Shown piece after piece: positions 3,842-64,000 of a stretch of DNA of 64,000 nt. Position 1 is the stretch's first letter; every line of letters begins with the position of its first letter. The notes under the pieces were generated by a model. It made no database searches. It was given only the letters and a program-made list of their open reading frames with translations, and was not told the DNA's origin. This DNA is from Macrostomum lignano (taxonomy: Eukaryota): NCBI GenBank assembly GCA_002269645.1, contig NIVC01002445.1, positions 108,998 to 172,997 on the forward strand. Direction: 5' to 3'. A program made the translations under genes and the position numbers.

Positions 3842-4490
3842 TGTCGTGACCCGGGTCGGTTTGGGTGCCCAGTCCCGAGTACAATATATTTTACGTAATC
3901 TAACAGGCGTAGTGACGCTCTGTCTGTACTTTTATGAATACGAGCAGGCGTGACGACGCTCTGCGATAATAGTTCGATTCCTCTGGTGTTGTGACACTCA
4001 GAGTTCACGCTGCGGCTCGAGGTGTGGTGACACTCTCGGGTGCTTCTAGTTTCGATACTGTAGGTTGTACACGCTATATAAAGTAACCGGTACAGTACTA
4101 CAATAATACGCAATATACAACGCTGCTGTGCCGCAGTGGTCAGGCGTGATGACGCTCTAGCTATGGAATCACTGCTACGGCAAGGCCTCGGAAAAGCTAA
4201 AGAAGCGAATGAACTCGGGGGTCTTACCGGTGCCAGAAACTGTGGAGCTCGTTCGAGTATCGCTACCACTTGACCGCTTTATTTCTAGCTTTGGGTACCA
4301 CAGATCGATAAACAGAGATGCCAAAATCCGAATTTGGACATGCAATAAATTGAGTCCTCGCAGTAAGAGACCGTATAGACACGGCTCGCTTGAATATCGC
4401 TAGGTTAGTTTGAAGAGCTGGGCACGGGCGCGGAGCGGAGAGCGGGGAGCTGGCTGGGCCAGGCTTGAGCACTATATACCACTTAACAGG
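3842..4490 (+). mobile_element. Possible solo-LTR-like segment
   Basis: Starts TGTCGTGAC, has three copies of CAGGCGT(A/G)xxGACGCTCT (3904, 3945, 4141), TATATAAAG at ~4075 and AATAAA at ~4345; no target-site duplication or clear end found. Confidence 0.25.
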
Positions 4491-4509: not shown

Positions 4510-4749
4510 CACGAGAATTTCCCGCAGCGAGTTTTTCCCGCGACGAAAATTTGCCGCAGGAGCTTTCCCCACACGAGATTCTCCCGCAGCGAGTTTTTAC
4601 CGCAGCGAGAGTTTCCCGCAGGAAATTTCCCCGTCGAGATTTTCCTGCCGAGCTTTTACCGCCGAGATTTTCCCGCACGAATTTTCCCCGCAGACTTTTT
4701 CCGCAAGAAATTTCTCGTGATTGCCTGTTTACCTTCCTACCTTCCTACC

Positions 4750-4806
<57 letters not shown>

Positions 4807-48409: not shown

Positions 48410-50700
48410 AAAGAGGGGCAGGGTGGATACAGGGGCGATAGAGGGGCAGGGTGGATAGAGGGGCAGGGAAGATAGAGGGGCAGGGTGGATAGAGGGGCAG
48501 GGAGATAGAGGGGCAGGGAGGATAGAGGGGCAGGGAAGATAGAGGGGCAGGGAAGATAGAGGGGCAGGGAGGATACAGGGGCGATAGAGGGGCAGGGAGG
48601 ATAGAGGGGCAGGGTGGATAGAGGGGCAGGAAGATAGAGGGGCAGGGTGGATAGAGGGGCAGGAAGATAGAGGGGCAGGGTGGATAGAGGGGCAGGAAGA
48701 TAGAGGGGCAGGGAGGATAGAGGGGCAGGGAAGATAGAGGGGCAGGGTGGATAGAGGGGCAGGGAGATAGAGGGGCAGGGAGGATAGAGGGGCAGGGAAG
48801 ATAGAGGGGCAGGGAAGATAGAGGGGCAGGGAGGATACAGGGGCGATAGAAGGGCAGGGAGGATAGAGGGGCAGGGTGGATAGAGGGGCAGGAAGATAGA
48901 GGGGCAGGGTGGATAGAGGGGCAGGAAGATAGAGGGGCAGGGAGGATAGAGGGGCAGGGAAGATAGAGGGGCAGGGTGGATAGAGGGGCAGGGAGGATAG
49001 AGGGGCAGGGAAGATAGAGGGGCAGGGTGGATAGAGGGGCAGGAAGATAGAGGGGCAGGGAAGATAGAGGGGCAGGAAGATAGAGGGGCAGGAAGGATAG
49101 AGGGGCAGGGAAGATAGAGGGGCAGGGTGGATAGAGGGGCAGGGAGATAGAGGGGCAGGGAAGATAGAGAGGCAGGGAAGATAGAGGGGCAGGGAGGATA
49201 CAGGGGCGATAGAGGGCAGGGAGGATAGAGGGGCAGGGTGGATAGAGGGGCAGGAAGATAGAGGGGCAGGAAGATAGAGGGGCAGGGTGGATAGAGGGGC
49301 AGGAAGATAGAGGGGCAGGGTGGATAGAGGGGCAGGAAGATAGAGGGGCAGGGAGGATAGAGGGGCAGGGAAGATAGAGGGGCAGGGTGGATAGAGGGGC
49401 AGGGAGATAGAGGGGCAGGGAGGATAGAGGGGCAGGGAAGATAGAGGGGCAGGGAGGATACAGGGGCGATAGAGGGACAGGGAGGATAGAGGGGCAGGGT
49501 GGATAGAGGGGCAGGAAGATAGAGGGGCAGGGAGGATACAGGGGCGATAGAGGGACAGGGAGGATAGAGGGGCAGGGTGGATAGAGGGGCAGGGAAGATA
49601 GAGGGGCAGGGAAGATAGAGGGGCAGGGAGGATACAGGGGCGATAGAGGGGCAGGGAGGATAGAGGGGCAGGGTGATAGAGGGGCAGGGTGGATAGAGGG
49701 GCAGGAAGATAGAGGGGCAGGGTGGATAGAGGGGCAGGAAGATAGAGGGGCAGGGAGGATAGAGGGGCAGGGAAGATAGAGGGGCAGGGTGGATAGAGGG
49801 GCAGGGAGATAGAGGGGCAGGGAGGATAGAGGGGCAGGGAAGATAGAGGGGCAGGGTGGATAGAGGGGCAGGAAGATAGAGGGGCAGGGATAGATAGAGG
49901 GGCAGGGAGGATATAGGGGCAGGGAAGATAGAGGGGCAGGGAGATAGAGGGGCAGGGAAGATAGAGAGGCAGGGAAGATAGAGGGGCAGGGAGGATACAG
50001 GATAGAGGGGCAGGGAGGATAGAGGGGCAGGGTGGATAGAGGGGCAGGAAGATAGAGGGGCAGGGTGGATAGAGGGGCAGGAAGATAGAGGGGCAGGGTG
50101 GATAGAGGGGCAGGAAGATAGAGGGGCAGGGAGGATAGAGGGGCAGGGAAGATAGAGGGGCAGGGTGGATAGAGGGGCAGGGAGATAGAGGGGCAGGGAG
50201 GATAGAGGGGCAGGGAAGATAGAGGGGCAGGGAGGATACAGGGGCGATAGAGGGACAGGGAGGATAGAGGGGCAGGGTGGATAGAGGGGCAGGAAGATAG
50301 AGGGGCAGGGAGGATACAGGGGCGATAGAGGGACAGGGAGGATAGAGGGGCAGGGTGGATAGAGGGGCAGGAAGATAGAGGGGCAGGGAGGATAGAGGGG
50401 CAGGAAGATAGAGGGGCAGGGTGGATAGAGGGGCAGGGAAGATAGAGGGGCAGGGAGGATACAGGGGCGATAGAGGGGCAGGGAGGATAGAGGGGCAGGG
50501 AAGATAGAGGGGCAGGGAGGATACAGGGGCGATAGAGGGCCAGGGAGGATAGAGGGGCAGGGTGGATAGAGGGGCAGGAAGATAGAGGGGCAGGGAGGAT
50601 AGAGGGGCAGGGAAGATAGAGGGGCAGGGAGGATACAGGGGCGATAGAGGGGCAGGGAGGATACAGGGGCGATAGAGGGGCAGGGAAGATAGGGGGGTAG
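48410..50700. repeat. 17/18-bp purine-rich minisatellite
   Basis: GATAGAGGGGCAGG(GAG/GTG/GAA/AA) units; source of the 836-aa spurious ORF. Confidence 0.97.
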
Positions 50701-50897
50701 GGAGGTTAGAGGGGTAGGGATGATAGAGGAAGTATAGAGGGAATGGGACTATTACAGAGGCTGGGAGAGTGGCAGGGGTATAAACAGGAGCATGACAAGT
50801 CAATCTGCTCTACAAGTGCATCAAGGGAGAGCGGTTATTCGCAGCTCAGCATCGCAGAGTGCCTCCCGGGAGTTGGCATGGAACTGGCCGGATAAAT

Positions 50898-52405
50898 TCA
50901 AATGTTTTTGCTGAGCCTGCGCTTAAAAAGCGGAATTTTTCGAGCCGTCGTTTTTTCACTTCGCAGCGGAGAGTCGGGCAGCCATTTCCCAATTAGCATG
51001 GGAGCGGCAGGGCTGGGAACATCAAAATGAAGCCGTTTTAGTCCGGCTGGCGATTTCGGGGACTGCGCTGTCCGTGTGCCGAGCTGATTGTTAATTCTGC
51101 CGCTGCGATTCGGGATTAGTCTAGACAGATGAAGTGCTGGGAGGCTGGCTGCACTGGCTCGGGTGCATTGCCGGTTCAGTGGACTCGCGCCTGAGGTGAT
51201 CGGGATGGCTCGAGAGCTGCAAATTTAGAGGTCGGAGTGATTCTCAAGATGCTGTAGGAGTGATTCTCAAGATGCTGTAGGAGTGATTCTCAAGATGCTG
51301 TAGGAGCGATTCTCAAGATGCTGTAGGAGCGATTCTCAAGATGCTGTAGGAGCGATTCTCATGATGCTGTAGGAGTGATTCTCATGATGCTGTAAGGAGT
51401 GATTCTCATGATGCTGTAGGAGTGATTCTCATGATGCTGTAAGGAGTGATTCTCATGATGCTGTAGAAGTGATTCTCATGATGCTGTAGGAGCGATTCTC
51501 AAGATGCTGTAGAAGTGATTCTCAAGATGCTGTAGGAGTGATTCTCAAGATGCTGTAGGAGCGATTCTCAAGATGTAGGAGCGATTCTCAAGATGCTGTA
51601 GGGGCGATTCTCATGATGCTGTAGGAGTGATTCTCATGATGCTGTAAGGAGTGATTCTCATGATGCTGTAGAAGTGATTCTCATGATGCTGTAGGAGCGA
51701 TTCTTATGATGCTGTAGCCTGTAGGAGTGATTCTCAAGGTGCTGTATGGGCGATTCTCATGATGTTAGGGACATTCCGCAGTTTGGTTTAAGGGTGATTA
51801 AATATTAAGGCAAGGTTATGGGTTTTGGCATGTATATCAAAGCGATCTTATAGAAAAAATTAAAAATCAGAAAATAGTATTCCAAATTCAGAATGACTTC
51901 AACTGTGCTAACTGTGTCACGTCCTCCAATCCTGTTATGTAATTTTTAAAATATAAGCAGGTTGCTGCCATGGGTTATCTTTAAGAGATTTTAAGAGATT
52001 TGGGCCAAAAATGAACCAGAAACAGCATATATTAGTTGGGGAGAAGTGGGAGTGGTTGTTAGAGATGAGAGCTGACGTGACTCATTTCAGCCGAAATCAA
52101 AAGGAAACAATGGCTTGGGAAACCGGCCACTTGTTCAAGCAGTTGGTGGGGTGGGGGGGTTGCCGCTGCAATCTGCAATTTTGCTTTGGCAAACGGATCG
52201 CTGCAGTCTGACAAATTTGCTTGCAGGGGGGGGGAGCTGATTGGTGTTTAATTTTAGCCATTGGCAAGCCCGATTTGGGCGTTGGCGCCGGCGGTCGCTG
52301 CATTTTGAATTGATGCCAGCTTTGCACTTTAGGCGCTGATACAATGGGCTGACGGCACCACTGCCGGCCTGCGACAGTTGGACATTGGCTGCCTTCGGAT
52401 TCCAT
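50898..52405 (-). CDS. Candidate two-exon gene for a basic, SP-rich ~197-aa protein of unknown function
   Basis: ATG 52405 to a weak donor at 52131 (AA|GTGGCC); acceptor TTTGCAG at 51217; 106 stop-free codons to TGA 50898; phases match; the intron holds a minisatellite as in the verified genes. No homology recognised. Confidence 0.3.
51235..51765. repeat. 23-bp minisatellite
   Basis: GATTCTCA(A/T)GATGCTGTAGGAG(T/C) units. Confidence 0.95.
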
Positions 52406-54815: not shown

Positions 54816-56009
54816 CCAAACAGCCGGGGCCTCTGATATCGAATGTCAGACTGGCCCAGTTGAGTATAAATTAGCCATTGCCCGATGAAAATCGCAGGCA
54901 GGCTGTTGTGCGCAGCTTCCTGTTATTTCTGCTCGATGCTTTCAGGTGCAAATAATTGTAAGCCATAAAAGCGGAGGATTTACGCTGCTTTTAGCCGATG
55001 GGGGAGGACCGGCATCCTTCATCCTGCTTGCTTGGGATCGAGTGGAGTTGTGGGTGCCCGGGTTTGCAGATCAAACGAGTGGCAGCCCACATCTCCTTAA
55101 TTGAGTTATCAACACGGCTGCCCCTGTGCTCAGATATCGCCGATTTGCAATAAATATCCGATATCCCCATTTTTTGCTTCTCCTCCCATGGGGTCCCGGC
55201 CGGTTTCAGACCCCCCCCCCAGTAAAAGGCTTGTAGGGGAATGATGACGAGAGGCGTCAAATAAAGATGCTAACAAAATCGGCAGATCAGCAGACAGCTC
55301 AGAGCTAATTATTCATTCCGGTCAAGCGCGGGTTGTTAAAGTGCGCCCAAATGCAGCAGAGGCTGAATCAATATTTCAAGTTTGCACTAATTTATTTTTG
55401 GCCCGCTTGCGTGTTTGCCATCGCCTGCCTGCTACAGTCAGCATTGCTATTATTACCATGATGACTCAAGCCCGATTGCTGCGGAGTCCGGGCTTGAGCA
55501 CGTGTGTGGGCGGCTGCTCTCGGTTGCTGGGAGACCGACAGTAGAGAAGGAAACTAGCAACGTCGCTGACAATACCATCCGGTTGCTACGAGAGTTTCAA
55601 ACTCCTATGAAGAGACGAAGAGCCACTGTGTCTCGTAAAGTGGCGATCGATACCGGATCCTGAATGGTAAAGATTCTATTTTAATCATAGATTCATAGAC
55701 CATGAAGTTCAACCATAGACAATCAATCCTGGCGCTGGAGAGAAGACTGCAACTGAAAGCTACGAGTATAATAGTTGCCACTATAAAAAAAACAAAAAAA
55801 TGAATTTCTTTCACCTTAGACCCAAAGGTGATTTTGCCATAGAAAAAATCAATTCTGTTCGCTTGATCGTGAAAGACTGATCAATTGACGTATTCTCACC
55901 GATTAGGGCTATTTAAATTAAAATTGCTACTCAACTCCAACCTGAGCACCGCACTTACAAGGGGGGCTTCAGGACGCACCCACACAAGGCTTCACCAGAG
56001 TCTGGACGC

Positions 56010-56120
56010 AGTGGTACAGCCTGGGGCTGGCACACATTGGCCGGTACGCCTCGGTAAGCTCTGGCGGGTCTTAATTCGATTGCTCTAGATTGAGTTAAGT
56101 AAGAGACCGTCTTTCCGGCT
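56010..56120 (-). ncRNA. Spliced-leader-RNA-like locus (diverged paralogue or pseudogene); 3' end uncertain
   Basis: Minus strand reads GCCGGAAAGACGGTCTCTTACTTAACTCAATCTAGAGCAATCG, versus the M. lignano SL as I recall it, CCGTAAAGACGGTCTCTTACTGCGAAGACTCAATTTATTGCATG: 20 of the first 21 nt identical, then ACTCAATxTAxxGCA. Confidence 0.55.
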
Positions 56121-56969
56121 AGCAAGGAGAGCAAATCAAGACGTGAACACGACACCACACCCCAACACACGGCGTCAGTAATTAAATATCTACGGCCCGC
56201 GGAGGGGGGGGGAGGCCAACAGCCCTCCAACCCACCACCCCATCGATCCCAACCCGCGCCAGCCAACCACACCGCCAGGGGGGGGAGGAAACACCGATCC
56301 CCCCGCCGCTCGGCCCAGCCAATCAGAACGCAGTAAGCAACAAATAGTACAGAAGCTCAACGATAAGTCGCAGTAAAAAAACGCCCGGCTTGAACCAATT
56401 GATGCATGTGGGGACAAACTGAGTCAACCTGGCACTGAAACAAAAGTGCATGCAGAAAACAACAGTAATAAAAGTATTGAGTGCAAGTTTCACTAATAGA
56501 TCGATAAAATTGACTCTTAGTCACTCAGAAGTTAGCAATGGAAAATCTTTTTTAAAATGAACATTACTACGCCTTTACACTTTCATTAAGCCTGGAGACG
56601 AAAAAAAGCTTTAATGTTTCAAGCAATTTAGCCAGCCCATCTTGGTCTGGGGGACAGATTGGCATTGTATGTATTGAGGCAATGCTGCCAGTGTTTGTAC
56701 TACAGCCGGGTAGGGACCGAGAGAGTTTCCAATTGGTGAAAAGGTGCCTTCGCAACCAACGCCCTTGAAGCTAATTTTTTGTTTGCTACGTCAATCAGGG
56801 CCAAAGCCAGTGGGAGCCGGGGCGGGCGGCCTCCTCACTCCGCCGCCCTCTCGCCCCCCCCCCCCCGGCGGGTCAGATTGCGTGTATTTAAGCTGCGGCA
56901 CGGGCCGCCCCAGCTGCCCTTACGCCACCAGCTCAGGCGCAACACTCGACAGCTACTCTCGAATCCGAC

Positions 56970-57380
56970 ATGCCGACTGCCGCGCACTGCCGCCAGCCGC
57001 CGCCGCTGGCCCTGCTACTGGCTCTGCTATTAATTTGCCTGGGCGCCCAGCTGCCAAAAGCGGCGGCGCAGAACGCCGAGGTCGAACGAATCTGCGGCCA
57101 AAATCCGTTCGAAAGGCTGAAGCAGATCGCCGAAAATATTCTGCAGAGAACTCTAACAGGCCGTGAGTAGCTGCTCAGGTTGCTAACCGATAATATCAAA
57201 CAGCTTAAACTTCGCGTTGCTAACCCCGGCAGCCACTCCCTTTATTCCGGTAATTTTGCAGCCGAGTTCCACATCCTGTTCAACCGGGCGCTTAGCGATC
57301 CGGAGAAGGGCCCGCGGCTGAAGGCTGCGGTCACCCGCTACCAGGAGTGCAGCCTGGGCGTGGAGAACAGCCACTTCTGA
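56970..57380 (+). CDS. Small secreted orphan protein, 103 aa
   Basis: Exons 56970-57162 (C|GTGAGT) and 57262-57380 (TTTTGCAG|), phase 1. Signal peptide LALLLALLLICLGA..AAA, mature part helical-looking with two Cys (ICGQNPF...YQECSLG); GC-rich coding-like codons. Confidence 0.65.
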
Positions 57381-58429
57381 ACTGGTGGCGCAATGCTAAC
57401 TGACTGAAATAGACACACCCGCACCTGGCCTACTCACCGGGCAGTGTTTAATCAAGCACCTCTTATTCACTCACCTCTTCCGGCACCAGTTTTGTGTTAT
57501 TCAATTCAATTTTAATCGGGTCGCAACAGCGAAATACAAATTTGAGCTAGACAAATTCGAGGACATGAGTCAACCTCATCTCAACCGGGTATCTGATTAT
57601 AAACTAACAGCTTTTGAGCAAGCAAAATAAAAACAATTGAGAGGATGCGTCTGTTACCGTGATGGCTTTTTGCAATTATTGTTATCAGCTTGTAGAAGAA
57701 ATCAGATTAGTTGCGAAGAGAGTAAAGCAACCCCACAGGCCGAAGGGATTGTGATTGATTCTATGGAAGGTCTAATCATTGTGGCAATCACGAGTTGTAT
57801 TAGGCTATTATTAATATAGATAATTGGGCGAATGTCTGGTGGAGTGAGCCTGTTCATAATTAGTGTTATTGTAATGCACTTATTTAAATAAATAAGCAGA
57901 GCAAATGTGATTGAAGTTGCCAGTGAGATACACAAATATGCGGCCACATATAAGAGGGTTTTAGAGAGAAAAAATATCGACAAAGGAGCGGTTGGCAACT
58001 ACATGTATCTACTGTCTAAGTTAATTTGAAGCAAAGAAGACAGACAGAAGCAGAAAAAATGATCGGAATAGCGTAGACTTCAAGTGTTCAGTAAAAATAA
58101 AACTTCAACAAATTAAAAACTAAGGCCTTCAATAATAGAAAATATCGAATATAGATTAATTGGCCCAGCTTCACTTCACGCAATCCAGAAACCCGATAGG
58201 CCAAGGTAATAAAATTTAATCGATAATTGAGGCATCTGACCTAATTTCATGGTGGATGTCCTCGGCAGACCTCGCAAAGTGCAAAGCTAAATTTAGCAAC
58301 AGAAACACAGCAAGAAAAAGTCGGTGTAACTAGGATTCCTGGTTCTCCGAATACATAATATTGCAGCGGGAACCCCCCACGCCTCCGTGCGTGCTTTTAA
58401 CGTCGATTTCACTGCCACTATTTGACTGC

Positions 58430-59150
58430 CGACCAAACCCCAACCACAACCAAAACCCCAACCACAACCCCAACCCCAACCACAACCCCAACCACAACCA
58501 CAACCCCAACCCCAACCCCAACCACAACCCCAACCACAGCCCCAACCCCAACCTCAATCACAACACCAACCATAATCACAACACCAAATCAAACACAACC
58601 CCAACCCCAACCACAACCACAACCCCAAACCAAACTACAACCCCAAACCAAACCACAACCCCAACCACAACCCCAACCCCAACCACAACCCCAACCACAA
58701 CCACAACCCCAACCCCAACCCCAACCACAACCCCAACCACAGCCCCAACCCCAACCTCAATCACAACACCAACCATAATCACAACACCAAATCAAACACA
58801 ACCCCAACCCCAACCACAACCACAACCCCAAACCAAACTACAACCCCAAACCAAACTACAACCCCAAACCAAACCACAACCCCAACCACAACCCCAATCA
58901 CAACACCAAATCAACCACAATTCCAACCACAACTCCAACCCCAGTCACAACATCAACCACAACCACAACACGAAATCAACCACAATTCCAACCACAACCC
59001 CAACCCCAGTCACAACATCAACCACAACCACAACACGAAATCAACCACAATTCCAACCACAACCCCAACCCCAGTCACAACATCAACCACAACCACAACC
59101 CCAACCCCAGTCACAACCCCAACCCCAACCACAACCGCAACCCAAAAATA
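58430..59150. repeat. Degenerate AACCCC/AACCAC hexamer array
   Basis: C/A-only low-complexity tract giving PT/PQ ORFs. Confidence 0.9.
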
Positions 59151-59366
59151 ATCGGCAGTCAAAAGCCGGGCTCCCGATTTAGACAGGCCTAGCATTCAGA
59201 ATTCCCTACGGAGAACTAACTTGACGATATGTTTAGAAAACCAATTTATCCCAAAGGTAGGCGAAGACAGCACCAACTTGAAGATTAATTACGAGCGTAT
59301 AATTGACAATATAATGTAAGGTAGGCCACAGAACATCATCCTCTCCATTAGAATCTGCGCTGGAAT

Positions 59367-62209
59367 TCAAAAGAACTCGGAGTCCGAGCTCTGGCTGGTG
59401 TCGCCTCCGCCTCCGCTGCGACCGGCAGCTCCGCCGTCCCGATGCGTTACGCCGCCATCGTTGTCGACCTCGGCGCTAACAGCGGCAGTGGCGGCTGCTC
59501 CGCCAGATGCGTCGCAGTCGTCTTCGTTGGCCTGCAGCAGCGAGGAGCGAGACCGGAGCAGCAGGCGGGAGAAGCTGGGGAACATGGCGGCCAGGAGCAG
59601 CTGCAGGCACTCGGCTGTGCGGGCCGAGCTGGCGCAGGCCAGAGCGGGTACGCCGCCTTCGGCGTCGGCGCAGAATAGGTTGGCCTTCTTGCTGATCAGG
59701 TGCTCAACAACGCCGGGCAGGCCGTTGCCGGCTGCCAGGTGGATTGGCCCTCGACCAGCGCTGTCCAGCTGCGGCAGGACCAAGGCGAGTCAAGGCGTGC
59801 GGTTAGCGCGGGTGGCAACCGCTTGCAGCAAGAATTGAAGGTTGCTTAGGGATTTTGGGTCACTTGAGGACTCTGGGTCACTTGGGGATTTTGGGTCATT
59901 TGGGGACTTTAAGCCACTTAGGGACTTTGGGTCACTTGGGGATTTTGGGTCACTTGGGGATTTTGGGTCAGTTAGGGATTTTAGGTCAGTTAGGGACTTT
60001 AAGTCACTTGGGGACTTTGGGTCAGTTAGGGATTTTGGGTCACTTGGGGACTCTGGTTCACTTGGGGACTTTGGGTCACTTGGGGACTTTGGGTCACTTG
60101 GGGACTTTAGGTCACTTAGGGACTCTGGGTCACTTGGGGACTCTGGGTCACTTGGGGACTTTGGGTCACTTGGGGACTTTGGGTCAGTTAGGGACTTTGG
60201 GTCAGTTAGGGACTTTGGGTCACTTGGGGACTTTGGGTCAGTTAGGGATTTTAGGTCAGTTAGGGACTTTAGGTCAGTTAGGGATTTTGGGTCAGTTAGG
60301 GACTTTAAGTCACTTGGGGACTTTGAGTCACTTGGGGACTTTGGGTCACTTGGGGACTTTGGGTCACTTGGGGATTTTGGGTCAGTTAGGGACTTTGGGT
60401 CAGTTAGGGATTTTGGGTCACTTGGGGACTCTGGGTCACTTGGGGACTTTGGGTCACTTGGGGACTTTGGGTCAGTTAGGGACTTTGGGTCACTTGGGGA
60501 CTCTGGGTCACTTAGGGACTTTGGGTCACTTGGGGACTTTGGGTCAGTTAGGGACTTTGGGTCAGTTAGGGACTTTGGGTCACTTAGGGACTTTGGGTCA
60601 CTTGGGGATTTTGGGTCAGTTAGGGACTTTAGGTTAGTTAGGGAATTTGGGTCAGTTAGGGATTTTGGGTCACTTGGGGACTTTGGCCTGTTTAGAATAG
60701 AAAAAACCTGACTCAATAGAGGATAGAATTGAAAAACAATCACTCCGACACTCATCACTCACAGCATTGATGAGATCCGGATCCACTATCCGCTCCAATA
60801 GGAGAAGAGCGGCTCCCTCGTCGCTAGTAGAGCAGGCGTGATGCAGACAGGTCCTGCCGTCGGCGTCAACCACCGACACGGAGGCGCCGGCATCAAGCAA
60901 CAGGCTGGTGGCAGCGGCGCGCGCCTTGCCGGCTGCCAGCAGAAGCGGCGTAGCGCCTTCAGCGTCGGCGACGTCAACGGTGGCGCCGTAGCGAAGCAGC
61001 AGGCTGGCAGCTTCGCAGTGATCGCCGTGCGCGGCGGCGTGCAGCGGGGTTCGACCACGCGAGTCGCGTCCGTCCACCTGGGCGCCGGCCTCTAGCAGGA
61101 GCTCAACGCAGGTGTCGTGGCCGCGGCCGGCGGCGCAGTGCAGCGGGCTGTAGGAGTTCCAGGCGCGCCAGACTGGCTTCTGCTCTCCCGAGGCTGGCGG
61201 GGCCGGCGGTGTCGGCGGATGCCGCTGCAGCAGCAGCTCGACGCAGCGCGTGAAGCCATGGTAGGCGGCGTAGTGCAGCGCCGAGTAGCCTTTGGCATCG
61301 ATGCTGGCCGCAGCTTCGGGTTGTTGCCGATGGCCGTGAGCAGGCGGTCGGTGGTGGCCTCGTGGCCGCAGGCGGCCGTCATGTGCAGCGCGTGGCGCTT
61401 TCGAAAATCGCGCGCCAGCGGATTGGCGCCAACTTTGATGAGTAGCTCAGTGCAGTCGTCGTGACCGTTGGCGGCGGCACGGTGCAGGGCGGTCCTCTCG
61501 TAGACGTCGGGCATCTGCGAATCGGCGCCTACCTTCAACAGCAGGCGGGCGGCCTCCAGGTGGCCGTTCTGGGCGGCCAGCATCAGCGGCGTGCGGTCGT
61601 GCGCATCGGCGCTGTCGATCAGCGGCCGGCCTCCGCGGCTCCACAGCATCGCCTGGAGGACGCCGACGTGGCCAGCAGCGGCGGCGTAGTGAAGGCCGTT
61701 CCAGCCGAACAGGCCGTCCACCATCTCCAGTGCGCAGCCGCTGCTGTCAGCAAGGTCTTAACTGCGCCCAGGTGGCCCTGGTGGGCGGCCAGGTGCAGCG
61801 GCGTGCGGCCCTGCGGATCGGCGGCCGAATTTGCGGGACTCTCCGGGGCCAGGTGCTTGGCCAGGAGGCTCAACACCTCATCGTGGCCGTGATAGGCGGC
61901 CAGGTGCTGCGGGCTCGGCGAAGAGTTCCAAGCGGCCCGGAGCACGGTGGCCCTGGTGGCGTCCAGCAGGCGGGCGACGGTGTGCCGGCTGCCAGCGCGG
62001 GCGGCGAAGTGCAGCGGCAGCAGCGGGCCGAGCTCGGGGAATTCAGCCGTCTGGCACGGATCGGCGCCGTGCAGCAGCAGCTGATCGGACAGCTGCGGGT
62101 CGCTGGCGGCGGCCAGGTGCAGCGGCGTGAGGCCCTGCCTGTCCGCCTGGCCCGGCAGGGAGCCGCCGTTCAACTGAGGGGCGAAGACGGAGAGGCATAG
62201 GATTAACGG

Positions 62210-62297: not shown

Positions 62298-64000
62298 GGA
62301 CAGACAGACGGCAGCTCACCAGAGTCACAGCCGCATTCCGATGCCCCTTGGCGGCGGCATAGTGCAGCGGAGTCCGGCCCACCGAGTCCAGGGCATTGGG
62401 ATCGGCGCCCTTGCCTAGCAGATATTCGACGCACTCAACGCGCCCACCAACGGCGGCCGCATGCAGGCAAGTTCGGCCGAATGCGTCAAGCCGGCCGATG
62501 GCCAGCGGCTGGGCCAGCGTGAGCCGCTGGACGCAGTCAAAATAGCCGGACAGGCAGGCAAGATGCAGCGGCGTGAGCTGGCTGGGCCGACTGGCCGGTC
62601 AGGCGAGGCGCCGGCCTTCATCATCACGTCAAGGAAGAGGTCGTGGCCTCGCATCGCGGCGACGCTGAGCGGAGTGTAGCCGGAGGCATCGACAGAGTCG
62701 GGCACGGCGCCGGCGGCCAGCAGCGACTGGGCGCGAGTGAACCGGCCGTGAACAGCGGCCATGTGAAGTGGAGTGCGGCCCTCCAGGCAGACCGCGTTCA
62801 CGTTGGCATCCTCGTGAATTAGCCAGTCTAGGCACTGAGCGCTGTGCGTGCCTGCAATGTAATGATTTGAAATGAAGGTGAGAAGGTGCTTCTTCTCAGG
62901 GTTGAACATACACTTAAGGGGGGTGGTCGGTGTTGCATGTACTCTAGGGAGGCTGGGTGGTCGGTGTCGCATGTACTCTAGGGAGGCTGGGTGGTCGGTG
63001 GCATGTACTCTAGGGAGGCTGGGTGGTCGGTGTTGCATGTACTCTAGGAGAGGCTGAGGTGGTCGGTGTTGCATATACTCTAGGGAGAGGCTGGGTGGTC
63101 GGTGTCGCATGTACTCTAGGGGGAGGCTGAGGTGGTCGGTGTTGCATGTACTCTAGGGAGAGGCTGGGTGGTCGGTGTTGCATGTACTCTAGGGAGGCTG
63201 GGTGGTCGGTGTTGCATGTACTCTAGGGAGAGGCTGGGTGGTCGGTGTTGCATGTACTCTAGGGAGAGGCTGGGTGGTCGGTGTTGCATGTACTCTAGGG
63301 AGAGGCTGGGTGGTCGGTGTTGCCTGTACTCTAGGGAGAGGCTGGGTGGTCGGTGTTGCATGTACTCTAGGGAGAGGCTGGGTGGTCGGTGTTGCATGTA
63401 CTCTAGGGAGAGGCTGAGGTGGTCGTGTTGCATATACTCTAGGGAGAGGCTGGGTGGCGGGTGTCGAATGTACTCTAAGGGAGGCTGGGTGGCGGGTGTC
63501 GCATGTACTTTAAGGGAGGCTGGGCAAAGGCCGCAGCACGCACCCGCAGCGGCCAGATGAATGGCAGTCTGTCCCAGCTGGTTCTGAGCCTCCAGCTCCA
63601 CCCCGGCCAGCTCGGAGCACAGCTGGTCGTTGCCATTGAGGCAGGCCACGTGCAGCGGCGTGTTGCCCTGCAGGGTGCCGCGTTGACGTCGGCACCCAGG
63701 TCGACCAGCTTGCGCGCGGCGAAGATATTGCCGCAGGCGGCGGCCGTGTGCAGCGGAGTGAAGGCCTGCTTATCGCGAGCGTTGATCTCAGCGCCGTGGC
63801 GGACCAGCAGGTCGATGAGATCCACGCTGCCGTTGTAGGCGGCCCAGTGCAGGGCGCGCCGGGTCGCGCTTGTCGAATGCGTTGACCATGTCCGGCGAGC
63901 GGGACAGCAGAAGCTCGGCCACTTCCGGGTGGCCGTTGAATGCGGCATGGTGCAGCGCCGTGTGGCCAGCCCGATCGCTGACGTTCGGATTAGTCAGATG
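59367..64000 (-). CDS. ANKRD28: PP6 regulatory ankyrin-repeat subunit (ANKRD28/44/52 family), 3' part, interrupted by ~5 single-base frameshifts as given
   Basis: Exons >64000-63544, 62851-62320, 62173-60763, 59768-59367. Family-specific strings AFDKRD(R)RALHWAAY.G, HLAAAGTHSAQCL, GRTPLHMAAVHGRFTRAQ, DAFGRTCLHAAA.GG, RTALHRAAANGHDDC, LERI.DPDLINA, PALACA....AECLQLLLA.M, C-terminal SDSE. Exact paralogue not resolvable. Confidence 0.85.
59850..60685. repeat. 18-bp minisatellite in last ankyrin-gene intron
   Basis: GGGACTTTGGGTCACTT(G/A) and GGGTCAGTTAGGGACTTT units. Confidence 0.97.
62205..62310. repeat. (GACA)n microsatellite in ankyrin-gene intron
   Basis: Direct reading. Confidence 0.95.
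62920..63520. repeat. ~34-36-bp minisatellite in ankyrin-gene intron
   Basis: GCATGTACTCTAGGGAGAGGCTGGGTGGTCGGTGTT units. Confidence 0.95.

What the first reader, a model, noticed from the sequence alone, without database searches (positions are those of the whole stretch)
55900..56340. Diverged spliced-leader-like RNA locus that lacks the terminal AUG and splice donor
Seen: the minus strand from 56119 reads GCCGGAAAGACGGTCTCTTACTTAACTCAATCTAGAGCAATCGAATTAAGACCC... Recalled from the literature (needs verification): the M. lignano SL is CCGTAAAGACGGTCTCTTACTGCGAAGACTCAATTTATTGCATG. The 5' 21 nt match at 20 positions, the 5' CCG..CGG hairpin is kept, and the 3' half aligns as ACTCAATxTAxxGCA after a 4-nt deletion. 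The flatworm-typical terminal ATG and a following GT donor are missing. It is not attached to a coding exon, so it is not a retrocopied trans-spliced mRNA; a GC-rich upstream region with a CCAAT box is shared, divergently, with the small secreted gene. Inference: a second SL class, an SL-derived snRNA with a helper role (cf. nematode SmY), or an SL pseudogene.
Basis: partly seen in the sequence, partly recalled or inferred. Interest (0 to 1): 0.8.

Follow-up and report, generated by a model that had tools for sequence, protein, structure and literature searches.

The report
Degenerate spliced-leader RNA gene relic
This is a broken, partial copy of the Macrostomum lignano spliced-leader RNA gene. 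It keeps the leader's 5' end and the first stem, but has lost the AUG, the splice donor, the Sm site and the fold, so it is most likely an ordinary pseudogene rather than a new kind of leader RNA.

Summary
From 56119 the minus strand matches the published Macrostomum spliced leader (SL) at 21 of its first 22 nt, starting at the leader's own first base. The match continues, more diverged, through the rest of the leader.

The window is M. lignano. The same locus, identical in sequence, sits in two other homeologous or allelic scaffolds.

Two canonical Macrostomum-type SL RNA genes recovered from environmental contigs show that homology continues past the leader into the intron. TAAGAC-CCG follows at the canonical 26-nt spacing, so the lower stem I is retained. 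This means the locus derives from the SL RNA gene or transcript, not from a trans-spliced mRNA.

The essential elements are broken:
- ATG is now ATCG.
- The donor GT is now TT, and there is no GT at all between nt 14 and 73.
- The Sm-site position reads AAUGUGUGC.
- Stem-loops II and III are not recognisable.
- Stem-loop I folds weakly, and a covariance model of the canonical gene scores 7.8 bits.

The functional genes are 45/45 identical in the leader and about 90% identical in the intron half across species.

Best reading: an SL RNA pseudogene or relic, a known kind. A second SL class is excluded by the sequence. An SL-derived helper RNA is unsupported but not excluded. Expression and copy number could not be tested.

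The parts
56077..56119 (-). SL-like segment, equivalent to the 45-nt spliced leader. Nt 1-22 (56119-56098) match 21/22. Nt 23-43 are diverged, with a 4-nt deletion, a 1-nt insertion and 5 mismatches. ATCG (56080-56077) stands in place of the terminal ATG.
56065..56074 (-). Remnant of the splice-donor strand of stem I: TTAAGACCCG, against the canonical GTAAGACACCG. The donor G+1 is now T. It lies the canonical 26 nt after UCUUA.
   Evidence: the covariance model aligns GCCGGAAAGACGGUCUCUUA[26]UAAGAC-CCG. TAAGACCC occurs only twice in the window, both times just downstream of an SL-like sequence.
56010..56064 (-). Stretch colinear with stem-loop II, the Sm site and stem-loop III of the canonical gene. 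AAUGUGUGC (56038-56030) sits where the Sm site would be, and a small hairpin CAGCC-CCA-GGCUG (56029-56017) sits where stem-loop III would be. Similarity is not significant.
   Evidence: p about 0.1-0.2. The covariance model deletes these 46 positions.
55928..55948 (-). Distal arm complementary to 56101-56081 of the SL-like segment: 20 pairs, 2 of them G-U, with one bulge on each side. Only marginally unusual against the local background.
   Evidence: -37 kcal/mol; 1/500 shuffles, 4/1000 random segments. One search shows 3.2% of GC-matched 45-mers do as well with their own downstream sequence.
55953..55958 (-). Consensus 5' splice site GTAAGT, 161 nt after the SL-like 5' end. It could make the locus the first exon of an unannotated transcript. 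Untested.
55917..55927 (-). Sm-like GCAAUUUUAAU directly after the distal arm. The haplotype differences start immediately after it. No support beyond the motif itself.
56120..56192 (-). Immediate upstream region. It holds a TATA-like TAGATATTTAATTA (56192-56179, at -73 to -60), a G/T-rich stretch, then a pyrimidine tract ending in AG (56140-56119) that abuts the SL-like start. There is no significant similarity to the upstream region of the canonical SL RNA genes.
   Evidence: The flanks of the two canonical genes are also unrelated to each other.
56195..56330 (.). GC-rich block with poly-G/C runs and a CCAAT (56319-56323 on the + strand).
56970..57380 (+). Neighbouring small secreted-protein gene (Mlig030769 family). 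Exon 1 is 56970-57162 and exon 2 is 57262-57380, with a TATA-like box at 56886. It was used as an anchor to fetch the homeologous loci. It is not part of the element.

Best explanation
The locus is a non-functional relic (pseudogene) of the Macrostomum lignano SL RNA gene. It is a copy of roughly the first 56 nt of the SL RNA: the 5' leader plus stem-loop I, including the donor strand. That copy has lost the terminal AUG and the GU donor. The Sm-site and stem-loop II/III module is missing or decayed beyond recognition.

- **Shown:** homology to the SL RNA gene, including intron bases; the lesions; presence of the locus in three homeologous or allelic copies of the region.
- **Inferred:** that it neither donates a leader nor assembles an Sm snRNP.

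Whether it arose by DNA duplication or by reverse transcription of SL RNA cannot be decided. No poly(A) tract or target-site duplication is left. Upstream regions of functional SL RNA genes are themselves unrelated between species, so the lack of upstream similarity says nothing either way.
For: - **Leader match.** 21/22 at the 5' end, starting exactly at the leader's first base. Score 46 against 19 +/- 2.7.
- **Homology runs into the intron.** The 3' half plus GTAAGAC is reached by only 7-13 of 5000 controls. An independent covariance model built from two canonical genes aligns GCCGGAAAGACGGUCUCUUA[26 nt]UAAGAC-CCG, which is the lower stem I at the canonical spacing.
- **Lesions in every essential element.** ATG is ATCG. 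GT is TT, and no GT occurs between nt 14 and 73. The Sm position reads AAUGUGUGC. Stem-loops II and III are not recognisable.
- **Weak fold.** Stem-loop I folds at -6.8 kcal/mol (z +1.1), against -15.6 (z -2.35) for the canonical gene. The full model scores 7.8 bits, which is noise level over the whole window.
- **Functional genes are strongly constrained.** The leader is 45/45 identical and the intron half about 90% identical between two environmental Macrostomum-type genes whose flanks are unrelated. The leader is also identical in M. lignano, M. cliftonense and M. hystrix. This locus is outside that constraint.
- **No gene attached.** No ORF, no protein homologue for the overlapping ORF, and no annotated gene within about 9 kb downstream in the GenBank scaffolds.
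- **Precedent.** Donor-less or AUG-less SL RNA loci are interpreted as pseudogenes in Schistosoma and Fasciola (PMC12582326), S. mansoni (PMC2770079), and C. elegans, Ciona and Hydra (PMC7986045).
- **A second example nearby.** A second degenerate SL-derived locus lies in the same window at 4385-4339.
Against: - **Uneven divergence.** The leader nt 1-22 plus the donor strand match 30/32, while the apical 24 nt match 14/24 (Fisher p = 0.002). Uniform neutral decay would not give this. It needs a localised complex mutation, gene conversion, or constraint on the lower stem and 5' leader.
- **Long-range complement.** A 20-bp complement to the SL-like segment lies about 130 nt downstream, although it is only at the 3% level against the local genomic background.
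- **Possible transcription signals.** A TATA-like box and a pyrimidine tract ending in AG precede the locus, and a perfect GTAAGT follows at nt 162, so it may be transcribed.
- **No decay visible between copies.** All three copies are identical across the locus. This is uninformative, because invariant runs of more than 200 nt are common in this region.
- **Untested.** Expression, copy number and conservation in other Macrostomum species could not be tested.
- **Reference limitation.** The reference intron half comes from environmental relatives, not from M. lignano itself.
Confidence: 0.62

Rival explanations
1. The locus is an exonised SL relic. The SL-derived fragment is embedded in an unannotated Pol II transcript, either a lncRNA or a 5' exon. 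Transcription would start near 56155, downstream of the TATA-like box. The AG at 56120-56119 could even act as a trans-splice acceptor. The GTAAGT at 55958 would be the donor of a first exon of about 161 nt. The SL similarity would then be historical baggage, as with the relict leaders of dinoflagellate retrogenes.
For: - A TATA-like ATATTTAATTA lies at -70 to -60.
- The pyrimidine tract TCTTGATTTGCTCTCCTTGCTAG abuts the SL-like start.
- A perfect GTAAGT sits at nt 162-167.
- A GC-rich block lies upstream.
- The second SL-derived locus also has a consensus GTAAG about 158 nt after its SL start.
- PMC8629364 reports that a sequence earlier published as the M. lignano SL RNA maps to the 5' end of a protein-coding gene.
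Against: - No annotated gene lies in the roughly 9 kb downstream in the GenBank scaffolds.
- There is no ORF and no homologue.
- All the signals are short consensus motifs noticed after the fact.
- No transcript data were available.
Confidence: 0.15
2. The locus is a processed retrocopy of a trans-spliced mRNA (leader plus mRNA body) that has decayed.
For: - Homology starts exactly at the first base of the leader.
- About 30% of M. lignano genes are trans-spliced (PMC8629364), so SL-tagged retrocopies should exist.
- There is no upstream similarity to the SL RNA genes.
Against: - The leader is followed by intron sequence of the SL RNA gene (TAAGAC-CCG) at the canonical spacing. A mature trans-spliced mRNA cannot carry this.
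- There is no poly(A) tract and no target-site duplication.
- There is no ORF and no homologue.
Confidence: 0.08
3. The locus is a functional SL-derived non-coding RNA. It would be a transcribed, donor-dead paralogue of the SL RNA that keeps the 5' 22 nt and the lower stem I, and forms a long hairpin with the distal arm next to an Sm-like AAUUUUAA. It might act, for example, as a decoy or helper in SL snRNP biogenesis, or use the leader as an internal promoter element.
For: - The 5' leader and both strands of the lower stem I are selectively retained: 30/32 against 14/24 (p = 0.002).
- The 20-bp distal complement is reached by 1/500 shuffles.
- An Sm-like motif directly follows the distal arm.
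- The locus is identical in three genomic copies.
Against: - The helix is at only the 3% level against the local background.
- The overall fold has z = -1.9, with 9/200 shuffles folding as well.
- There is no Rfam family hit, including for SmY.
- No covariation data exist.
- The lack of differences between copies is not unusual for this region.
- The T-to-G change breaks a pair of the 5' hairpin.
- There is no evidence of expression.
Confidence: 0.08
4. The locus is a second functional spliced-leader class (SL2-like) that donates a variant leader to mRNAs.
For: Only the resemblance of the 5' 22 nt.
Against: - There is no GU between nt 14 and nt 73. The next consensus donor would give a 161-nt leader containing an AUG-initiated upstream ORF.
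- There is no Sm site at the canonical place, and the SL RNA fold is lost.
- Published transcriptome analyses report a single SL (PMC8629364; PMC12582326).
- The metagenome scan, which allowed the variant spacing, found only canonical leaders.
Confidence: 0.02

Closest known systems
Canonical Macrostomum SL RNA gene (109 bp in M. lignano, PMC8629364; examples recovered here at L002:615-720 and L005:1589-1693)
   Same: It has the same first base and 21 of the first 22 nt. The rest of the leader is recognisable. The lower stem I, with the donor-strand sequence TAAGAC-CCG, sits at the same 26-nt spacing.
   Different: ATG is ATCG. The donor GT is TT. The apical part of stem-loop I is rewritten. 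The Sm site and stem-loops II and III are not recognisable. The flanks are unrelated. The fold is weak (-6.8 against -15.6 kcal/mol for stem-loop I).
SL RNA pseudogenes of other trans-splicing animals: Schistosoma bovis and S. haematobium and Fasciola hepatica loci without a conserved donor (PMC12582326); six aberrant S. mansoni copies (PMC2770079); C. elegans sls-1.1, sls-1.5 and sls-2.19, and the many Ciona and Hydra copies (PMC7986045)
   Same: These are dispersed copies with clear leader homology that lack the splice donor and/or the AUG and lie outside the functional gene cluster.
   Different: Many of the described pseudogenes are 5'-truncated. This one is 5'-complete and 3'-degenerate, and its divergence is concentrated in the apical part of stem-loop I. 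No such locus has been described for M. lignano, where the published search accepted only 100% matches to the leader.
Relict spliced leaders at the 5' ends of retrogenes (dinoflagellates; PMC6050394, PMC12014239)
   Same: A genomically encoded leader sequence lies at the start of a non-SL-RNA locus and is preceded by a possible acceptor AG.
   Different: Here intron bases of the SL RNA follow the leader, and no coding body follows. So the source was the SL RNA or its gene, not an mRNA.
Nematode SmY RNAs (Rfam RF01844)
   Same: They share only the general idea of a small RNA linked to SL trans-splicing.
   Different: SmY RNAs are nematode-specific, about 70-90 nt long, with two stem-loops around a canonical Sm site and no leader homology. 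No Rfam match was found here.

Membership tests
Functional SL RNA gene (flatworm type) | The 5' exon is identical or nearly identical to the leader found on mRNAs | tested here: not met
   About 35 of 45 positions match, with indels. The 3' half is diverged. The leader is 45/45 invariant in all canonical sources.
Functional SL RNA gene (flatworm type) | A GU splice donor lies immediately after the leader, within stem I | tested here: not met
   UU stands at the equivalent position (56074-56073). There is no GU from nt 14 to 73.
Functional SL RNA gene (flatworm type) | A terminal AUG at the 3' end of the leader | tested here: not met
   AUCG at 56080-56077.
Functional SL RNA gene (flatworm type) | An Sm-binding site between stem-loops in the intron half | tested here: not met
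   The colinear position reads AAUGUGUGC. The covariance model deletes this module. A distal AAUUUUAA at 55925-55918 is a motif match only.
Functional SL RNA gene (flatworm type) | A three-stem-loop secondary structure | tested here: not met
   The covariance model R1 gives 7.8 bits (E 4.1 over the window). Stem-loop I has z = +1.1, against -2.35 for the canonical gene.
Functional SL RNA gene (flatworm type) | The leader is found trans-spliced onto mRNAs | not testable with these tools
   No M. lignano read data could be reached. The only indirect check, a metagenome scan allowing the variant spacing, returned canonical leaders only.
SL RNA pseudogene / relic | Significant homology to the SL RNA gene, extending into the intron | tested here: met
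SL RNA pseudogene / relic | Disabling changes in essential elements (donor, AUG, Sm site, fold) | tested here: met
SL RNA pseudogene / relic | Evolves without constraint and is not expressed as an snRNA | tested here: inconclusive
   Three M. lignano copies are identical across the locus, but invariant runs of more than 200 nt are common nearby. Divergence from the parent gene is uneven. Expression is not testable.
Processed retrocopy of a trans-spliced mRNA | The leader is joined directly to an mRNA body, with no SL RNA intron sequence | tested here: not met
   TAAGAC-CCG follows at the canonical spacing.
Processed retrocopy of a trans-spliced mRNA | A poly(A) remnant, target-site duplication, and coding remnant or parent gene | tested here: not met
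   There is no A-run of 5 or more and no direct repeat of 8 nt or more at the borders. There is no ORF and no homologue.
SmY-type helper snRNA | A match to the SmY model: two stem-loops flanking a canonical Sm site, about 70-90 nt | tested here: not met
   No Rfam hit at the gathering threshold or at E up to 10.

The most novel reading that the evidence does not exclude
The locus is a transcribed, donor-dead paralogue of the SL RNA that is kept in all homeologous copies. The 5' 22 nt and the lower stem I would be under constraint. The rewritten apical part would pair with a distal arm next to an Sm-like site. This would be a flatworm SL-derived regulatory or helper RNA, for example a decoy for SL RNP factors, or an element transcribed from the leader acting as an internal promoter.
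Probability: 0.07. Interest if true: 0.65.

Novelty: new member of a known kind. Interest (0 to 1): 0.2.

Why it matters
As a pseudogene it matters mainly for annotation. The published M. lignano SL RNA gene search accepted only 100% matches and found eight genes. This one 64-kb window already holds two degenerate SL-derived loci.

Such relics may therefore be much more numerous than the functional genes. They can attract SL-containing reads or be mistaken for SL RNA genes, and one such mis-assignment is already on record for this species.

The locus also gives a small data point on how SL RNA genes disperse and decay in a flatworm with a recently duplicated genome. It would bear on how trans-splicing is organised only if it turned out to be expressed and conserved.

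Tried and rejected
- **Rfam.** There were no hits at the gathering threshold on the whole window, and only noise at E up to 10 on the locus. The canonical gene in L002 also gets no hit, so Rfam does not cover this family.
- **Fetching more copies through ORFs.** Exact look-ups of the ORF across the locus and of the neighbour's exon-1 ORF found nothing. A homology search with the 105-aa ORF across the locus found nothing. A search with the ORF antisense to the canonical gene in L002 found nothing.
- **Intron-half homology (stem-loop II, Sm site, stem-loop III).** Local, semi-global and position-constrained alignments against L002 gave p about 0.1-0.2. The idea that the distal GTAAGTGCGGTG...AAUUUUAA is the true intron half, separated by an insertion, scored p about 0.08. 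A second degenerate copy inside the locus was not supported. All of these were rejected as unproven.
- **Upstream promoter comparison.** No significant similarity to L002. This test turned out to be uninformative, because the two canonical genes also have unrelated flanks.
- **Constraint from the three M. lignano copies.** There are zero differences in 55914-56131, but equally long invariant runs are common nearby, so I draw no inference.
- **Long-range helix.** It looked significant against shuffles and random segments. It fell to about 3% against GC-matched 45-mers paired with their own downstream sequence.
- **Transposon or MITE reading of the inverted repeat.** There is no other copy of any part of 55000-57500 in the window. 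This reading is neither excluded nor supported.
- **Other scans.** No tRNA-like content was found. The bacterial-type promoter and terminator scan is irrelevant here. The viral-contig scan found nothing.

Full report
**Observation.** The minus strand from 56119 reads GCCGGAAAGACGGTCTCTTACTTAACTCAATCTAGAGCAATCGAATTAAGACCC.
- The M. lignano 35-mer is CGGTCTCTTACTGCGAAGACTCAATTTATTGCATG (PMC8629364).
- The full 45-mer assembled for M. cliftonense is GCCGTAAAGACGGTCTCTTACTGCGAAGACTCAATTTATTGCATG, and M. hystrix has the same sequence minus two bases (PMC10468722, suppl. Table S3).

The window matches 21 of the first 22 nt, beginning at the leader's own first G. The leader alignment scores 46 against 19.2 +/- 2.7 in shuffles, 0 of 500 reaching it. 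Nothing in shuffled windows comes within 5 mismatches of the 22-mer.

**Organism and copies.** The neighbouring two-exon gene (56970-57162 and 57262-57380, + strand) encodes a 103-aa signal-peptide protein. It is 97% identical to BOX15_Mlig030769g3 of Macrostomum lignano. Two GenBank scaffolds of assembly GCA_002269645.1 carry collinear copies of the region: L003 (NIVC01003162.1) and L004 (NIVC01002166.1). The SL-like locus is present and identical in both (alignment A1). There are no differences in window 55914-56131. Invariant runs of 200-300 nt are common in this alignment, so this gives no evidence of constraint. No gene is annotated in the roughly 9 kb downstream of the locus in either scaffold.

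**Canonical reference genes.** A pattern scan of metagenome contigs found a trans-spliced mRNA (L001) and a genuine SL RNA gene (L002:615-720). A scan of prokaryotic genome bins found another gene on a contaminant contig (L005:1589-1693). Both read GCCGTAAAGACGGTCTCTTACTGCGAAGACTCAATTTATTGCATG|GTAAGACACCG..TGATCCAAT..TGGATC..ATTTTTAGCAGCCC..GGGCT.
- They are 45/45 identical in the leader.
- They are about 90% identical in the intron half, and the clearest differences lie in hairpin loops.
- Their flanks are unrelated.

This fits the published description of a 109-bp gene with a GTAAG donor, an Sm-like site and three hairpins. Two consequences follow. Functional genes are under strong constraint along their whole length. 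Lack of upstream similarity cannot be used to decide how a copy arose.

**What the locus retains.** The 3' half of the leader is only marginally similar on its own (p about 0.05). With the first intron bases included, 7-13 of 5000 controls reach the observed score. A covariance model built from the two canonical genes with the three-hairpin structure (R1) independently aligns the locus as GCCGGAAAGACGGUCUCUUA [26 nt] UAAGAC-CCG. That is both strands of the lower stem I at exactly the canonical spacing. Because intron nucleotides follow the leader, the source was the SL RNA gene or its primary transcript, not a mature trans-spliced mRNA.

**What it has lost.**
- The ATG is ATCG (56080-56077).
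- The donor GT is TT (56074-56073).
- There is no GT anywhere from nt 14 to nt 73, so no leader of ordinary length could be donated.
- The position of the Sm site reads AAUGUGUGC.
- Stem-loops II and III are not recognisable. Alignments of the intron half are not significant, and the model deletes those 46 positions.
- Stem-loop I folds at -6.8 kcal/mol (z +1.1), against -15.6 (z -2.35) for the canonical gene.
- Over the whole window the model's score for the locus (7.8 bits, E 4.1) is at noise level.
- Rfam has no match, but it has none for the canonical gene either.

**Interpretation.** The simplest reading is an SL RNA pseudogene or relic: a 5'-complete, 3'-degenerate copy with every essential element damaged. 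Loci of this kind are reported in several trans-splicing animals:
- donor-less or AUG-less loci in Schistosoma and Fasciola (PMC12582326);
- aberrant copies in S. mansoni (PMC2770079);
- pseudogenes in C. elegans, Ciona and Hydra (PMC7986045).

A second SL class is excluded by the absence of a donor. I put about 0.6 on the relic reading.

**Loose ends.**
- Divergence is uneven: 30/32 in the 5' leader plus donor strand, against 14/24 in the apical part (Fisher p = 0.002).
- The rewritten apical part (56101-56081) is complementary over 20 bp to 55948-55928. This beats shuffles (1/500) and random segments (4/1000). However, 3.2% of GC-matched 45-mers do as well with their own downstream sequence, so it is marginal.
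- A TATA-like box at -70 to -60, a pyrimidine tract ending in AG that abuts the first base, and a perfect GTAAGT at nt 162 allow the alternative that the relic lies inside an unannotated transcript.

None of these can be resolved without read data or other Macrostomum genomes, and the tools could not reach either.

The CCAAT (56319-56323) and the GC-rich block exist. The secreted gene's TATA-like box and ATG are at 56886 and 56970. A shared divergent promoter is therefore not supported.

**Verdict.** The feature is real and correctly spotted. It is ordinary in kind: a new member (for M. lignano) of the known class of SL RNA pseudogenes. A small residual chance remains that it is a transcribed SL-derived RNA.

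Noticed in passing
window 4214-4385 (minus strand): A second SL-derived locus. It reads GCCGTGTCTATACGG followed by the 35-nt leader with one mismatch and an intact ATG (4385-4339), and no donor comes next. Instead TCCAAATTCGGATTTTGGCA follows, which resembles stem-loop II plus an Sm remnant. Then, 109 nt after the ATG, comes GGTAAGACCCCCGAG. Its alignment to the canonical intron half scores 35 against 24 +/- 3.8 (29/2000 shuffles). It looks like an SL RNA gene copy disrupted between the leader and the donor.
   Followed up: partly
window 56073 and 4226 (minus strand); 55958 and 4227: The 8-mer TAAGACCC occurs only twice in the 64-kb window, each time just downstream of one of the two SL-like sequences. 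This suggests the M. lignano SL RNA intron may begin GTAAGACCC. Both loci also have a consensus GTAAG 158-161 nt after the SL 5' end. This may be coincidence.
   Followed up: partly
L005:1589-1693 (JAGQZA010000190.1): A complete Macrostomum-type SL RNA gene sits on a 3.7-kb contig filed as a Flavobacteriaceae MAG (HKST-UBA79). This contig is evidently flatworm DNA contaminating the bin. A similar gene is on the JGI metagenome contig Ga0302322_100095745 (L002:615-720).
   Followed up: partly
window 56925 and 56992 (+ strand), against L003 and L004: The small secreted-protein gene differs between homeologous copies. L003 and L004 carry a 20-nt insertion in the 5' UTR region and a 9-nt (3-codon) insertion in the signal peptide. 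This explains the 97% identity and the 103-aa versus 106-aa lengths.
   Followed up: partly
window 48412-51766, 58360-59200, 59790-60760, 62921-63524: Large tandem or low-complexity repeat blocks with strong GC skew. They include long open frames made only of short peptide repeats (PKSLTD-type, and PQ/PT/N-rich). They vary in length between the three homeologous copies.
   Followed up: no
window 4530-4800 (minus strand): Just upstream of the second SL-derived locus there are short tandem repeats: ACAG repeats, and units of about 25-30 nt of the type GCGGGAAAATCTCG.
   Followed up: no
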